A stretch of 64,000 nt of DNA from Perna viridis (taxonomy: Eukaryota). The translations under genes were made by a program, and so were the position numbers. Shown piece after piece: positions 24,401 to 45,689 of the stretch. Positions within the stretch are counted from its first letter, which is position 1; each line of letters starts with the position of its first letter. Location: positions 13,702,001 through 13,766,000 of the forward strand of contig CM074517.1 of NCBI GenBank assembly GCA_037379345.1, read 5' to 3'. Under the pieces are notes generated by a model. That model saw only the letters and a program-made list of their open reading frames with translations. It was not told where the DNA came from and did no database searches.

Positions 24401-27400
24401 GCATGAAGATATTAAAAAGCAACACATCTGCAAGGCTCACCTAACCCCCAATACACTCTTTATTGTGTATAAAATCTCACGACGGATTTCTCGCTCACAT
24501 ATACCATCTGATTGGTACACCTGTAATACAAAGGTTAACAGTCAATACAGGTACCCGGTCACTCACCTAATAGCATGAATATTCTTGATTATTATACCAA
24601 TTTCTCGTCGTAATTCTCGCTCATCAAACTCCATCTACAAGATAAAATCTACTTATTACAACAAACCTAAATGAAAAATAATAAATGCCAACCCGCCAGC
24701 TTTCACTCCAAAATGTGATAATAATCAGAAAACTATTTTGTATCTTTTACAAGCAAGGAAAAAGCAAGGAACTATTTATACTGTAGCCCACACGAAACAA
24801 ATGAAATGACATCTGACGAAGCTGGAATATTTACAACCACTATGAAAGGCATCGCTACTGCTGACAAACTCCATCCCCCTTACCATTCAGTCACTCAGAA
24901 TATACAATATAAAAATGTTATCAACCTGGAAACCCTTGCTTAGCTGTACTTGTTAAATTTTGGTAAAAAATCACACACGCCCACACACACACACAGACCC
25001 TTTGTATGTGCTGCATACTAAGGAACAATGAATTCATTTCTGCTTTATACAATACCTTGACTAGTTCAAAGGGAAATCGTTCATGAAAAATTCTATTAAT
25101 TTTTGCTCCTCCACTGAGTTCTAGGGCACTAATCTCAGCACCTGAACCTTCTATAGACTTCTCAAAATCTCCACCAAACTGTGTACACATCCTAAAAAAT
25201 AAACAAGTTAAATTTTTTTGTAGTGTATAGAAATGCTATAAAACCACAGTTAAGGGCCAGAAACCAATCACTTTCTATCTCAGTATCCCAAGCCAAATCT
25301 AATGACTGTCTGGATCTGATTTTTACTTATGATAACTGCATTGTAACATAAGCCAGATATAGAAGATTCACAGGATACCACAATGGAAACAGATCACAAA
25401 TTGAAACAAAATCTATTTTTAAACAATAACAAAGATATACTGGTGGACATTTGTAAAAATACTATTTAAGTTTTTAAATTAGCTACCAAAATTTCTTTTG
25501 AAGCAGAATGACATTCAAGTACACAATACAATATTACATACTGCATCATGGCTTTAGTCTTTCTGGCTGGATCATCAGGTCTGAAGTTTTTGAATTCTTC
25601 CACATCTTTCTCCATGCCTAACAGCTGAGATTGTAACTTATTTCTGAGGGCAGGTAAAGTGTCTTTTATATGATTGGTCAGTTGTTGGTTTAAGACTCTC
25701 TGTAGATGTGGTGTACCCATTCTGTCTGCCATGTGCCTATATATCATCAAAAATTCAAAGTAGTGTTTTATTACTAACATTAATTACAGGAAAACGATAA
25801 TGTAGCTTGAGCTTGTTGTGAGGGCTTACATTATTGTTTTTCTGTAATTAGTGTTGATAATAAAAACACTACTTTGAATTTATTATTAACATTAAGTACA
25901 GGAAAACAATAAGTACAAAAAAAACAATAATGAAGTTTGAACTTGTTGTGAGGGCTTACATTAACTTTTTGATGTTATATGCAGTACAAATTTTCATGAA
26001 ACATCAGACATAAGCAAATTAATATAATAAGTATTGTTTGATATCTAATGTAATATTAACTAATTACCTTCAATATTGAAATACATGTACAGACAAGTAT
26101 TACTTCTGAACTCATGTAATATATATATCTAACTATTTTACATGTACTCTATCCTATCCACTTAATTAATGCATAAAATTGTATATCTTTACTGTTTTAG
26201 TTTTCAACAATATACCTGTATGAGGGATGACTGAGAAAGAATTTACGTTCAGCAGCCAATGCAGCTCTGATGTCTTTTCTTCCTTCAATATCTTTCTGAC
26301 TTCTGTTGACTACACCAATATAACCTAAAACAATAAAATCAATTTGATCATATTCTATTGATACATAGTATCTAAAATTCATACTTTGTACTCTTAACTG
26401 TCTTTTTTAATGTGTGAAAGCTTCATTAATCTGTTCATATGCATGTCCCCATCTTTTACACAAAAACTGGAAGCATCATATCTATGATAAATTTATATGC
26501 TTAAATACTGGATACTAATGGAGGTTTTATTTTGATTAAAAAAACAAAATTTGTGAGACAGACAGACAGACAGGACAAGTAGGTTATCATCAACCTCTAT
26601 GGCAAAATGTTTTCAAAAACGCCTTTGATGGCAAAATGTTTAAAAACTCCAAAACTACATTTTGGGTTTGCTGAAAATTGAACACAATCAATATTTTATT
26701 GTATTAAACAACTGTTCAAAGTTTCAAAGTTTTCACAATTTATTGATCCCTTCTGGCTTCACAAGTTATTATCTGGACACTGTCAGAGAGAGTAATTAAA
26801 GGAACCAATGTTATAGCGGTAATCAAAAGAATGCAATCCAGGGACAAAGACCAGACATCAGGGGATGAACAGACACACAACTTATCATAAAGTATCACAT
26901 AATACTTGGCCACTCCTTGTGGTGGAATATAAAGTATCACATAATAATTGGCCACTGCTTGTGGAGGAATATAAAGTATCACATAATACTTGGCCACTCC
27001 TTGTGGTGGAATATAAAGTATCACATAATACTTGGCCACTGCTTGTGGTGGAATATAAAGTATCACATAATAATTGGCCACTGCTTGTGGTGGAATATAA
27101 AGTATCATATAATAATTGGCCACTGCTTATGGTGGAATATAAAGTATCACATAATAATTGGCCACTCTTGTGGCGGAGTCAATATTCTGCAAAATACATC
27201 ATCTCAAATATAGCAAATACTCCACAGCAATCAAAATCTCCTTCAACAATGATAACTATACCTAACTAAGAGTAGATCCCTACCTCTCCTGAGTGGTAAT
27301 GTTCTGTTTTCTAACACTTCTCTAGCATCTGTTCCTTCATCCATTAAATCTAGTTTGGTCACTACACCCATTGTTCTTACACCTAAACAATATTAAAACA

Positions 27401-42384: not shown

Positions 42385-45045
42385 TTATTGTGCTACTACA
42401 TAATTTTTGTGTAATTCTGGCTGGATGTCAACAACAAAGTCTATTAAGTTTTTAATGGCTACTTCTTTGTTCCTTCGTACATTATCTTCAACTTCTTTTA
42501 ATTTTCTCTTCGTCTCAATATCAATTTGAGACTCCATGTCACTTCTAGATCCTAAGATCTGTAACAGAAATTTAGATTCTATTACAATATTTTACATTTT
42601 ATAAATATACTCATGCATCTAATGTTACAAAAGGAATATAAATATCAATCTACATAACTAATTATACTAATACAACATGTACAGCAGGAAAATATGTCTC
42701 ATATTTTGTGCATCTTATATTACATTTTTATACTAATATACTTGCAAATGTATATTATAATGTAACTTAAAATATATGTAATTTACAATCGTTGATTAAT
42801 ATAACACCAATTATTGTTGAATTTTAAGGATTAACCTTTTAATGATATGCACAGCATCCAATACTGTGCATATCATTAAAATACACCTGTCTTGTGGGAT
42901 ATTCCAATTTATTCATACAGTGTACTGTTTTTTAAAATATCTTGTACTACTTCATTTAAGAATTGAATGTTTCATCTTTTTCACTTCATTGGTATTTTAA
43001 AGTATTGACCATAGCACATTTTCAATGAAGCATGTTATTTATATTTGAAAATGAGAAACTAGTCAGTGCTTTTACAAGCCAATGAAATATCAAATATGAA
43101 ACATTCAATTCTAATACTTACATGTACATTTGACATGTTCCTCTTATTTGTATTGCATCTGTATCAAAGTGTTCATGATGGCAAATACTGTTTCATTTAT
43201 TTTAATTTTATTTTTAGAAATGCAAACGCAATTATCAACAAGCTTTGGGTGTTGCCCATATAAATAGCTTGAAAGGTGTTTCATTGAGTATTCAAACATC
43301 ATTTTTATCAATAGTTTAATGAGCAGCACTTTAATACTCACTTACTTACACCATTTATTCATTATGAGCTCTGATCATCAATCATTTCTATGCAAGATGA
43401 GACTTACAGATTTTTCATATTTTTTGTACTGGTCCTCTCTCTGTTTTCTGTAACCATCTATTTCTGCTTGAGCTTCTTCTTTTGCCTGCTTCAGTCTCTT
43501 AGCTTTCCCTGCAAATAACAAATAATGCATCAAATTGATATCAGAGGAAGGAAATTCAGCAAGTCTGATGCAAAGGACTACAAAATTGACATTATGGACT
43601 GAAGATAAAAATATACACTCCCTGAAACTAGACATTTACATTCATTGTACAACCTCCCAAATATAGAAGTCTTGAAGAAAAAACTTTTTAATTGCAGAGC
43701 AATACTACCAGTAAGCATACTTATTAACTTTCTGTATCCAATAGCTATTTATTGTAATATATAAATGCAAATTCATTTTGTTTATACATACAATTGTATT
43801 AGCAAAGATAACATTAATAACAGTAATCTGCTTAAATAAATTTACTACTGCTTTGATATTGTTTCAAATTTCTTTACATACATGTAAGTTGCATTCTTTT
43901 TAGATGGATTCATATGCTAAGTTTGTCATCTTCCCTTTGCAAACCCTAGCTGGATCACTAAGACAATTCCTTTGTATATATGGAACAACCAGTAATTTGT
44001 TTAAAAACAATTGCAAATCAGTCCATGTTAATGTTCATGAACAGTGAAGTACGATAGACACTACTGTACGTAAGTACTACCAAAAATATCTCCCTTTGCT
44101 TTCTATGCAAAATTGATCCATTAAAAAAAAATTGGGCATTATTGGAACATTAGATAACCCTTGCCATGTAATTGTCAAAAAGGGGGATGGAATAATGTTC
44201 AAAATGGCCTTACTTGAAAACTTCATATTGGAATATGAGGAGTTATTATTTTTCATGACCAGTTTTGAAATTTACCAATGATTTAAACTGAAAAAACAGA
44301 ACAGAACAGAATGGAGCAGAAACGATTTTTAAAACCGGAATCTAACAGAATATTTCAAAATTCCGCTGAAAAATTATGTCCGCTACCCTTCTGTTCCAAA
44401 AGTAACAAGCTCCACCTACTCTCTATTACGGTTCAAAATGTCAACAAAACAGGGTCTCTCGTGGAAAATGATCAAAACTTCAAGAAATAATGTAATTTTT
44501 GTAGCAAATTTGATATCAGCATACAGGAAAATGATTCCAGAATCGAACTAGATAGGTGTGACATGCACAATTTCAACTTGAACGTCGTTACAGGCGGTTG
44601 AAGGGCGGTACTCTGTGGTACCACTAAATCTCCAACTTTTTGTATGGCACATCGTTCTGATCCCAACCCGACGTATCAATAATATCCAAATAAAAAAGAG
44701 GAGGGTTGCAGGGTCAGAGGAAATTCGGACAACCTGTAAACATTTAAGAGAATAAATTTTACAAACACAGCAAGTGTATGAGTGAACTAGGAAGTCTGAC
44801 ATGAGGAGCTCGAAATATTTGGTAGATTCATCTTTTACACGGGTGAATATAACTAAGAAACTGTGAACTGTCAACTTTGAACATTTTTCACTTTTCAGAA
44901 GGAAGATCAACCCAAGAAACTTTTACCATGGGTCACAAACCTTACAGTCAGTTGTAACCTTACTTTTTCTAGCATCCGACACCTTTTCAGCTGCCATCTT
45001 TTCAGCTTTTAAGAGCTGTTGTATTCCAGTAGATTGACTAGCCAT
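42385..45045 (-). CDS. ATP6V1G: V-type proton ATPase subunit G (118 aa)
   Basis: Exons 45045-44964 (MASQSTGIQQLLKAEKMAAEKVSDARK), 43508-43408 (RKAKRLKQAKEEAQAEIDGYRKQRE..), 42558-42385 (ILGSRSDMESQI..DIQPELHKNYVVAQ*); 82+101+174 nt, canonical GT-AG. Confidence 0.97.
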
Positions 45046-45689
45046 GATCGCCGTAATCTTATGACAGGAAGTGGTGAGTCAAAGTGATTTGCAGAATGGA
45101 TTCAGTACATTTTCTAAATTAAAAGTTAATCCCGGATAAAATAATTCCGGTTTTTGTTTTTGTCTTGTGTACTCTAGGTGTCCTAGTCCTATATTGCTTG
45201 AGAAGTTTTTCTTCAGGAAGATCTTGTTATCAATTTAATAGATAAAACATCCTATGAAAAATCCAATGATAGAAATCCTTTTCAGGTCCAAATTTCAAAT
45301 GTTATGTATTTTGCTTTGGACGTGACATAAAAATCAGATTAGAAAATAAAAAAAATTCCATCATCCTGAGTCTGCTCAGGACTTACGACGTATAGGAGGC
45401 TGGAATTCCGTTTCTCCACATCCGAACGATGGCACCAAATTAGAAAAAGCTCGCCAGACAACCTCTATAGCTTTGTTGGAGTTCTCAGACTTGACCAGTG
45501 GCTACTTATAGCGATAATTACACTGATCCAGCGAAATGCAAGGATACCACTGTAATGTCGTATTGGGAACTAAACGCATTGTTTTGGCTATCAAATCTTA
45601 TCTTTAACTTGCCTGGTTATAATCAATATGTATTGGCCTAGGCCAATTTGACATATCGGACTAGTTGGTCATTAAAGGTATGGTATCAT

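What the first reader, a model, noticed from the sequence alone, without database searches (positions are those of the whole stretch)
24441..24634. Duplicated stalk exon 9 separated from its twin by only 46 nt: sterically enforced mutual exclusion at the self-assembly loop
Seen in sequence: 9a [23 protein letters not shown] (68 nt) and 9b [27 protein letters not shown] (80 nt) share ERExRREI..IK...R, phase 0-2 and a gtgag donor. The spacer is 46 nt (gtgagtgacc..gttaacctttgtattacag), which puts the branch point about 30 nt from the 9a donor. Joining both exons frameshifts, and retaining the spacer hits TGA at once. Established knowledge: the end of this exon is the IHGIR(395-399) L2 loop of stalk interface 3, where mutations block dynamin polymerisation. 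Short donor-to-branch distance is a known mechanism of exon exclusion (alpha-tropomyosin). Inference: 9b (VLGVR, plus 4 aa and a Cys) could be an assembly-modified isoform. Exon 9a also has IHAIR instead of IHGIR.
Basis: partly seen in the sequence, partly recalled or inferred. Interest (0 to 1): 0.78.

Follow-up and report, generated by a model that had tools for sequence, protein, structure and literature searches.

The report
Alternative twin exons in mussel dynamin stalk
The single classical dynamin gene of this mussel-like animal carries two tandem versions of one small exon, which encodes the tip of the protein's self-assembly stalk. RNA shows that each transcript uses one version or the other, so this is a real and conserved, but fairly ordinary, example of alternative-exon switching.

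Summary
On the minus strand, exon 9a (24634-24567, 68 nt) and exon 9b (24520-24441, 80 nt) are diverged copies of the same dynamin exon. A 46-nt GT..AG spacer separates them.

RNA settles whether both are used. One raw-read RNA run and spliced contigs from three other studies show exon 8 joined to 9a and exon 8 joined to 9b at acceptor 24520. Both 9a and 9b run on into exon 10. Exon 9b makes up about 15-28% of transcripts. No product containing both exons and no retained spacer was seen.

A related species (L009) keeps the same layout: 68 nt, a 49-nt spacer, then 80 nt. Silent-site divergence from that species is saturated (dS about 1.3). There, 9b evolves about nine times faster than 9a but is still constrained. 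Six other invertebrate loci have only one exon 9.

Exon 9 encodes the L1C loop, helix alpha1C and the first half of the L2 loop (human residues 377-399, interface 3). Exon 9b lengthens L1C by four residues and keeps Gly397, which 9a has changed to Ala.

I class this as a new member of a known kind. Earlier notes from this scan list many such exon pairs in this genome, including a PH-domain exon triplet in the same gene.

The parts
25056..25190 (-). Dynamin exon 8. Its donor at 25056 is the common donor for both alternative acceptors.
   Evidence: Sequence. Pfam Dynamin_M positions 117-159. RNA depth and joints from 25056 to both 24634 and 24520.
24635..25055 (-). Intron 8, 421 nt. It is 1231 nt in relative L009.
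   Evidence: Joint 25056->24634 with GT..AG ends. Lengths compared.
24567..24634 (-). Exon 9a, 68 nt, the major form. It corresponds to human dynamin-1 residues 377-399, with IHAIR in place of IHGIR.
   Evidence: Ten junction reads in X21. Contig depth 54/44/42 in X1-X3. The loose end at 24567 continues into the start of exon 10.
24521..24566 (-). 46-nt GT..AG spacer between the twin exons. It is never seen spliced out on its own and never seen retained.
   Evidence: Sequence. No 24567->24520 joint and no spacer coverage beyond the exon edges. The L009 counterpart is 49 nt.
24535..24542 (-). Candidate branch-point adenosines, read from sequence only. ttgAc has its A at 24542, which is 25 nt from the 9a donor and 21 nt from the 9b acceptor. 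ttaAc has its A at 24535, which is 32 nt and 14 nt respectively.
   Evidence: Match to the YTNAY consensus read. Not mapped experimentally.
24441..24520 (-). Exon 9b, 80 nt, the minor form (about 15-28%). It gives an L1C loop four residues longer and ends in VLGVR.
   Evidence: Joint 25056->24520 in X21 (3 reads) and in contigs of X1, X2, X3 (depth 20/17/14). The loose end at 24441 continues into exon 10. An 80-nt orthologue is present in L009.
14954..24440 (-). Intron 9, about 9.5 kb. It contains tandem repeats and long ORFs that are probably from mobile elements.
14815..14953 (-). Exon 10, 139 nt, present as a single copy in this genome. It is the common acceptor for both 9a and 9b.
   Evidence: Pfam Dynamin_M positions 185-228. 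There is only one tblastn hit in the window. The loose-end consensus at 24441 and 24567 is the reverse complement of its first 26 nt.

Best explanation
Exons 9a and 9b are a tandem-duplicated, mutually exclusive exon pair in the animal's classical dynamin gene.

**Shown.**
- The exon-8 donor (25056) is spliced either to the 9a acceptor (24634) or to the 9b acceptor (24520).
- Whichever exon is chosen is then spliced to exon 10 (14953).
- This gives two in-frame proteins that differ only in the segment matching human residues 377-399.
- About three quarters of transcripts carry 9a and about one quarter carry 9b.
- The layout, including the very short spacer, is kept in a relative whose silent sites are saturated. 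The pair is therefore old and both copies are under selection.

**Inferred.**
- The 46-nt spacer leaves at most 25-32 nt between the 9a donor and any branch point for 9b. That is too short for both sites to be engaged in one spliceosome, so 9a cannot be joined to 9b.
- Exclusivity then reduces to one choice: which acceptor pairs with exon 8, or which donor pairs with exon 10.
- Any double inclusion or double skipping shifts the frame and would be removed by nonsense-mediated decay as a back-up.

**Inferred function.** Exon 9b remodels the membrane-proximal stalk tip. It gives a longer L1C loop next to the PH domain, a different alpha1C surface and a different L2 motif. This would tune interface-3 assembly or PH-stalk autoinhibition.

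**My odds.** Real functional exclusive pair 0.9. Steric block as the main enforcer 0.6. An assembly-related effect of 9b 0.4.
For: **RNA use.**
- Joints 25056->24634 and 25056->24520 have GT..AG ends in one raw-read RNA run and in contigs of three other studies.
- Loose ends at 24567 and 24441 both read into exon 10.
- No 9a-9b joint and no spacer coverage were seen.
- Depth ratios put 9b at about 25-28% in contigs, 23% of junction reads in X21, and 14-19% by X21 read depth.

**Run shares.** RNA-type runs fall into two groups, holding 0.28-0.30 or 0.22 of the sampled words. The gap is about the size expected for the words of one small exon.

**Frame logic.**

**Homology of the twins.**

**Conservation in L009.**
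- Exons of 68 and 80 nt, the same phases, AG/GT sites and a 49-nt spacer.
- Exons 8+9a: dS about 1.3, dN 0.039.
- Exon 9b: dN 0.356 with pS 0.81, so omega is below about 0.3.
- The flanking introns cannot be aligned.

**Position in the protein.**
- PDB numbering.
- In a low-confidence model, a loop at 376-380, a helix at 381-394 and a loop at 395-403.
- Literature: IHGIR395-399AAAAA and G397D abolish assembly, R399 is needed for assembly, and L1C lies next to the PH domain.

**Steric precedent.** A donor-to-branch-point distance under 50 nt is a recognised mechanism, proposed for 9% of human clusters.
Against: - No branch point has been mapped.
- The minimum spliceable intron length of this species is unknown. 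Some animals splice introns of 40-50 nt.
- Absence of the double-inclusion product is weak evidence. X21 has only about 20 reads over the site, contigs drop rare variants, and the product would be degraded anyway.
- The three X21 reads across the 8->9b joint share one start and may be copies of one molecule. The three contig runs carry the independent support.
The listed loose ends at 25056 show only 9a; two further rows of that table were not displayed.
- Conservation rests on a single relative.
- No protein-level or functional data exist.
Confidence: 0.75

Rival explanations
1. The pair is mutually exclusive, but exclusivity is kept mainly by reading-frame surveillance. The 46-nt spacer can be spliced, and the frameshifted 9a+9b mRNA is removed by nonsense-mediated decay. 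The short spacer is simply a relic of tandem duplication.
For: - Both exon lengths are 2 mod 3, and double inclusion gives an early stop.
- In humans, 60% of such clusters have lengths not divisible by three.
- Read depth here is too low to exclude a rare double-inclusion product.
Against: The spacer has stayed at 46-49 nt across a divergence with saturated silent sites, whereas the neighbouring intron changed from 421 to 1231 nt. That suggests the short length is itself maintained. No double-inclusion contig was found in three runs.
Confidence: 0.25
2. The choice and exclusivity are controlled by competing RNA secondary structures (docking and selector sites), or by a hairpin that masks the 9a acceptor, rather than by spacing.
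For: An 18-nt, 83% complementary pair joins intron 8 (24710-24727) to the middle of exon 9a (24586-24603), looping out the 9a acceptor. The fold has z = -1.96. A structure-based mechanism has been proposed for vertebrate dynamin-1 exon 10a/10b (Suyama 2013, listed in the references seen; I did not read it).
Against: 10 of 200 shuffles fold as well. The region is AT-rich and gave 13 such pairs in 900 nt. The equivalent L009 segment shows no corresponding structure (z = -0.59). Folds across the spacer and 9b are no better than shuffles in either species.
Confidence: 0.1
3. Exon 9b is a decaying or noisy pseudo-exon. Its inclusion is splicing noise that yields a non-functional or neutral dynamin.
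For: Exon 9b evolves about nine times faster than 9a at non-synonymous sites. It is absent from six other invertebrate loci. It does not hit PDB or Pfam on its own.
Against: - It is used in about a quarter of transcripts in four independent studies.
- Exact length, phase, both splice sites and 14 of 26 residues are kept despite saturated silent divergence, with omega below about 0.3.
- It retains residues that are invariant in other dynamins (R385, E387, I388, I392, G397, R399).
- It scores higher against the vertebrate exon than 9a does against 9b.
Confidence: 0.07

Closest known systems
Vertebrate DNM1/DNM2 exon 10a/10b mutually exclusive pair
   Same: It is a tandem-duplicated, mutually exclusive exon pair in the stalk (middle domain) of classical dynamin. 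Its length is not divisible by three. It alters an assembly-relevant segment: the fitful A408T mutation in 10a impairs oligomerisation.
   Different: A different exon is duplicated. Here it is the 68-nt exon just upstream (residues 377-399). Exon 10 is single in this genome. The twins differ in length (68 vs 80 nt) and sit only 46 nt apart. This is an independent origin in the lineage of this animal and L009.
Alpha-tropomyosin exons 2/3 and other steric-hindrance exclusive pairs
   Same: The upstream exon's donor lies closer to the downstream exon's branch point than a spliceosome can span. The two exons therefore cannot be joined to each other. This class is recognised in the human survey. 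The tropomyosin case itself is from my own knowledge.
   Different: Here the whole intron is 46 nt, so any branch point qualifies. The branch point has not been mapped, and the block has not been tested experimentally.
PH-domain exon triplet of the same gene (scan note s1-763657)
   Same: Same gene, the same kind of tandem alternative exons, and it affects the neighbouring membrane-proximal module.
   Different: It is a different domain with three copies. I did not test it. Any linkage between the two choices is unknown.
Tandem exon-10 pair in another invertebrate lineage (L052, L053, L054)
   Same: It is another non-vertebrate dynamin with a duplicated stalk exon: two 139-nt copies with AG/GT sites.
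   Different: Exon 10 is duplicated there, not exon 9. The intron between the copies is 282 nt. I have no RNA evidence, and the organism is unknown to me.

Membership tests
Mutually exclusive exon pair from tandem exon duplication | Adjacent exons that are homologous to each other and encode the same protein segment | tested here: met
   Nucleotide and protein alignments. Best non-self hit in the window. 0 of 20,000 shuffles reach the score.
Mutually exclusive exon pair from tandem exon duplication | Same phase, so that either exon alone keeps the reading frame | tested here: met
   68 and 80 nt are both 2 mod 3. Both end in AG, completed by the first base of exon 10. Including both gives a stop.
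Mutually exclusive exon pair from tandem exon duplication | Transcripts carry one or the other exon, never both and never neither | tested here: met
   8->9a, 8->9b, 9a->10 and 9b->10 are all seen, and no 9a->9b joint. Limits: depth is low, and the skip-both junction could only be judged from loose ends at 25056. The listed loose ends there show 9a; two rows of that table were not displayed.
Mutually exclusive exon pair from tandem exon duplication | Both copies conserved in related species | tested here: met
   L009 has 68 nt, a 49-nt spacer and 80 nt, with intact frames and splice sites. This is one relative only.
Steric-hindrance type of mutual exclusion (alpha-tropomyosin type) | Distance from the upstream donor to the downstream exon's branch point is below the spliceosomal minimum (about 50 nt) | tested here: met
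   The whole intron is 46 nt. Candidate branch points lie at +25 and +32. The threshold comes from the human survey, not from this species.
Steric-hindrance type of mutual exclusion (alpha-tropomyosin type) | Lengthening the spacer, or moving the branch point, permits joining of the two exons | not testable with these tools
   This needs a minigene experiment.
Steric-hindrance type of mutual exclusion (alpha-tropomyosin type) | Introns of this length are not spliced elsewhere in the organism | not tested
   No annotation or genome-wide junction set was available.
Classical dynamin (GTPase, middle/stalk, PH, GED) | All four domain families are present in order in one gene | tested here: met
   Exon by exon: Dynamin_N, Dynamin_M, PH (weak, below the cut-off for that single exon) and GED. 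The exon order is shown.
Orthologue of the vertebrate exon 10a/10b pair | Two copies of the 139-nt exon encoding residues 399-444 | tested here: not met
   The window has a single copy of exon 10.

The most novel reading that the evidence does not exclude
The 9a/9b choice is coordinated with the choice among the three PH-domain exons of the same gene. Matched stalk-tip (L1C/L2) and PH surfaces would then form distinct autoinhibited tetramers and polymers that assemble differently, or do not co-assemble. A single-copy gene would thereby reproduce the division of labour that vertebrates achieve with three dynamin genes plus exon 10a/b.
Probability: 0.12. Interest if true: 0.7.

Novelty: new member of a known kind. 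Interest (0 to 1): 0.45.

Why it matters
Dynamin polymerises through three stalk interfaces. Residues 395-399 are so critical that mutating them was how non-assembling protein was obtained for crystallography.

A natural, conserved isoform pair that swaps this loop, the preceding helix and the little-studied L1C loop next to the PH domain is a ready-made experiment on how interface 3 and PH autoinhibition can be tuned.

It also corrects a published generalisation, drawn from fly and worm, that invertebrate dynamins have no middle-domain alternative exons. Stalk exons were duplicated at least twice outside vertebrates: exon 9 here, and exon 10 in the L052-L054 lineage. This points to recurrent selection for stalk isoforms.

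As a splicing case, the 46-49-nt conserved spacer is a clean candidate for steric exclusion in a mollusc.

Tried and rejected
**Dead ends**
- **Short-peptide searches.** PDB and Pfam searches with 9b alone gave nothing. Pfam also gave nothing for 9a at that length, although 9a did hit dynamin-1 chains in PDB, so the result is uninformative.
- **Word search with 9b.** I did not work around this rule.
- **Relatives in the genome collection.** There are none for a eukaryote.
- **Metagenome DNA scans with back-translated 9a motifs.** The first found nothing. The second gave 35 chance matches, none of them dynamin.
- **The big representative search.** It returned only ORF-like fragments and vertebrate full-length proteins, with no mollusc full-length protein. 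I could therefore not check whether 9b isoforms are already annotated in public protein sets.
- **Contig look-ups.** Several contigs ended before exon 9 (L010, L011, L012, L048-L051). One had no DNA available.
- **A weak 9b-like hit in L002.** It lies just after exon 9, but has no acceptor and runs into a stop, so it is chance.

**Inconclusive**
- **RNA hairpin and competing-structure idea.** It is not significant and not conserved.
- **The AlphaFold model of a vertebrate homologue.** Overall quality was poor (mean pLDDT 45.7). I used only the secondary structure of the stalk segment, as a check on the published loop names.

No model of a 9a or 9b full-length protein was made.

Full report
**1. 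What is in the sequence**

The gene lies on the minus strand. Reading 24800-24300 gives, in order:
- an acceptor ending in ttgtag;
- a 68-nt exon, 24634-24567;
- a 46-nt GT..AG spacer, 24566-24521;
- an 80-nt exon, 24520-24441;
- a gtgag donor.

Exon 8 ends at 25056 on a codon boundary. Exon 10 begins at 14953 with an A, which completes the split AG codon of either exon 9 to Arg.

Exon-by-exon Pfam scans place the gene in the classical dynamins, with Dynamin_N, Dynamin_M, PH and GED in order. Exon 8 covers Dynamin_M positions 117-159 and exon 10 covers 185-228. That leaves exactly the gap that exon 9 fills.

Exon 9a aligns over its whole length to human dynamin-1 residues 377-398.

**2. Is the duplication real?**

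- The two exons align at nucleotide level through a shared core.
- In a six-frame search of the whole window, each is the other's best non-self hit (E about 0.02, next best about 3).
- None of 20,000 shuffles reaches the observed protein score.
- Their position adds to this: same strand, 46 nt apart, same phase.
- The genome holds only one copy of this region.

**3. Are both exons used?**

Run shares:
- The run search listed 24 runs. Sixteen RNA-type holders and four DNA-like runs of the same organism hold part of the stretch.
- Ten of the RNA-type holders carry 0.28-0.30 of the sampled words and six carry 0.22.
- The gap of about six of 74 words is roughly what one small exon would contribute.

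I laid one raw-read RNA run (X21) and contigs from three other studies (X1, X2, X3) on 24200-25400.

Junctions:

| Junction | X21 reads | Contig depth X1 / X2 / X3 |
|---|---|---|
| 25056->24634 (8->9a) | 10 | 54 / 44 / 42 |
| 25056->24520 (8->9b), GT..AG ends | 3 | 20 / 17 / 14 |

Other observations from the same call:
- The loose ends at 24567 and at 24441 have the same consensus. It is the reverse complement of the first 26 nt of exon 10.
- No joint removes the spacer alone.
- No read covers the spacer beyond the exon edges.
- The out-of-frame acceptor at 24507 is not used.
- All X21 first mates lie on the plus strand, as expected for a stranded library of a minus-strand gene.
- Exon 9b is about 25-28% of the total in the contigs, 23% of the junction reads in X21, and 14-19% by X21 read depth.

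Caveats:
- The three X21 junction reads share one start.
- X1-X3 are only guessed to be RNA, although spliced contigs can hardly be anything else.
- Depth is too low to exclude rare double inclusion.
- Exon 10 lies 9.5 kb away, so the skip-both junction could only be judged from loose ends at 25056. The listed loose ends there show 9a; two further rows of that table were not displayed.

**4. Frame logic**

- Both exon lengths are 2 mod 3.
- Reading 9b in the frame left by 9a gives a stop after 19 codons.
- Reading into the spacer gives a stop straight after the Arg codon.
- Only single inclusion gives a dynamin.

**5. Conservation**

No relatives are in the genome collection. I therefore used the ORF-like fragments that public gene callers make from exons 7 and 8 of eukaryote DNA and fetched their contigs.

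The relative L009:
- Its exon 8 is 43/45 identical to the window's. The same exon-8 sequence also occurs on contigs from hydrothermal-vent metagenomes (L048-L051).
- It has a 1231-nt intron 8, a 68-nt exon 9a (21/22 residues identical), a 49-nt GT..AG spacer, an 80-nt exon 9b and a gtgag donor.

Divergence between the two species:

| Segment | dN | Silent sites |
|---|---|---|
| Exons 8+9a | 0.039 | dS about 1.3 |
| Exon 9b | 0.356 | pS 0.81 |

- Flanking introns cannot be aligned.
- Exon 9b therefore changes about nine times faster than 9a. It has still kept its exact length, phase, splice sites and 14 of 26 residues, with omega below about 0.3.
- The spacer stayed at 46-49 nt while intron 8 changed almost threefold.

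Other loci:
- Six other invertebrate loci (L002, L006, L007, L052, L053, L054) have a single exon 9 and nothing 9b-like before exon 10.
- L001 has no introns between exons 8 and 10.

Among what I could sample, the pair is specific to the lineage of this animal and L009.

**6. Where it sits in the protein**

A model of a vertebrate homologue was poor overall. In the stalk segment (pLDDT about 50-67 across residues 361-400) it gives:
- helix 358-375;
- loop 376-380;
- helix 381-394;
- loop 395-403;
- helix 404-448.

This matches the published names L1C, alpha1C and L2.

From the literature:
- IHGIR395-399AAAAA and G397D are the assembly-dead mutants used for crystallography.
- L2 is the hydrophobic core of interface 3.
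- R399 is needed for self-assembly.
- L1C lies next to the PH domain and is little studied.

From the alignment of the four exons:
- The four extra residues of 9b lengthen L1C. One lies at the exon's N-terminal end and three follow the conserved Asp380.
- Asp380, Glu381, Arg385, Glu387, Ile388, Ile392, Lys393 and Arg399 are kept in all four exons.

Comparison with other dynamins:
- Exon 9a, in both species, has Ala at position 397. That position is Gly in all 14 dynamins aligned.
- Exon 9b keeps Gly397 and Tyr390, but changes Asn394 and His396.
- Exon 9b scores higher against the vertebrate exon (60-66) than against its own twin (48-49).

Each copy has thus kept a different subset of ancestral residues. 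That looks like division of an ancestral exon's features, not decay of one copy.

**7. Mechanism**

Shown: one donor, two acceptors, one common downstream acceptor, and in-frame products.

Inferred, steric block:
- The two YTNAY matches in the spacer put a branch point 25 or 32 nt from the 9a donor.
- Any branch point inside a 46-nt intron is closer than the roughly 50 nt used as the steric limit in the human survey, where 9% of clusters qualify.
- If 9a cannot be joined to 9b, choosing 9a forces 9b to be skipped. Choosing 9b removes 9a within the lariat.
- The conserved short spacer supports this.

What keeps it an inference:
- Decay of the frameshifted product would hide any leak, so steric enforcement is likely but unproven.
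- I found no convincing competing RNA structure. One 18-nt pairing between intron 8 and exon 9a has z = -1.96 and is not kept in L009.

**8. Comparison with what is known**

- Vertebrate DNM1 and DNM2 have a mutually exclusive pair at the next exon (10a/10b).
- A paper on that pair states that invertebrate dynamin has no such variants, based on fly and worm.
- This animal has one exon 10, so the pair here is a separate event at the neighbouring exon.
- L052-L054, from another invertebrate lineage, have two tandem 139-nt copies of exon 10.
- Stalk-exon duplication is therefore recurrent.
- My literature searches found no paper on a mollusc dynamin exon pair. They cover open-access text only.

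**9. Context and verdict**

- Earlier notes of this scan list 29 findings on mutually exclusive exons in this genome. They include a PH-domain triplet in this same gene.
- Those notes call the animal a mussel.
- The genome size of 723 Mb is close to the 726 Mb published for the green mussel, and the relatives come from vent metagenomes. Both fit a mytilid, but I did not verify the species.
- The finding is real and well supported as an alternative exon pair. It is a new member of a known kind, of moderate interest mainly to people who study dynamin assembly.
Noticed in passing
L053:11275-11834 (also L052:11568-12122 and L054:3609-4167): Another invertebrate lineage has a single exon 9 but two tandem 139-nt copies of dynamin exon 10. 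One record is NCBI GCA_029980185.1; the organism is unknown to me. The copies have AG/GT sites and are 282 nt apart, the same exon that is duplicated in vertebrates. This contradicts the published statement that invertebrate dynamins lack middle-domain alternative exons.
   Followed up: partly
window 24567-24581 and L009:2127-2141: The major exon 9a has Ala at the position of Gly397 (IHAIR) in both species. That position is Gly in 14 aligned dynamins, and G397D is assembly-dead. The minor exon 9b keeps the Gly.
   Followed up: partly
runs X1-X14, X19, X20: RNA-type runs fall into two groups, holding 0.28-0.30 or 0.22 of the sampled words. Runs of similar size within one study (X1 vs X11 and X12) fall in different groups. 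This may mean sample-specific presence of one of the twin exons. I could not lay more runs.
   Followed up: no
window 24586-24603 and 24710-24727: An 18-nt, 83% complementary pair between intron 8 and the middle of exon 9a would loop out the 9a acceptor. The fold has z = -1.96, and the pairing is not seen in L009.
   Followed up: yes
window 18683-19420: Four head-to-tail copies of a unit of about 179 nt, each with an open frame of about 54 aa, lie inside the 9.5-kb intron 9.
   Followed up: no
window 26743-27178: A minisatellite-like tandem repeat is open in two frames, with the short motif [13 protein letters not shown] repeated. It lies in the intron between dynamin exons 5 and 6.
   Followed up: no
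window 19660-20307 and 21975-22508: Two long open frames (216 and 178 aa) lie on the minus strand inside intron 9. They are probably remnants of a mobile element or nested genes.
   Followed up: no
L001:1713-2024: In one metagenome-derived relative, dynamin exons 8, 9 and 10 are contiguous with no introns. Exon 9 begins QEFDE there.
   Followed up: no
window 42388-45078: Upstream of the dynamin gene, on the minus strand, several short open frames look like exons of a V-ATPase subunit G-type protein. This is read by eye from the ORF list and has not been searched.
   Followed up: no
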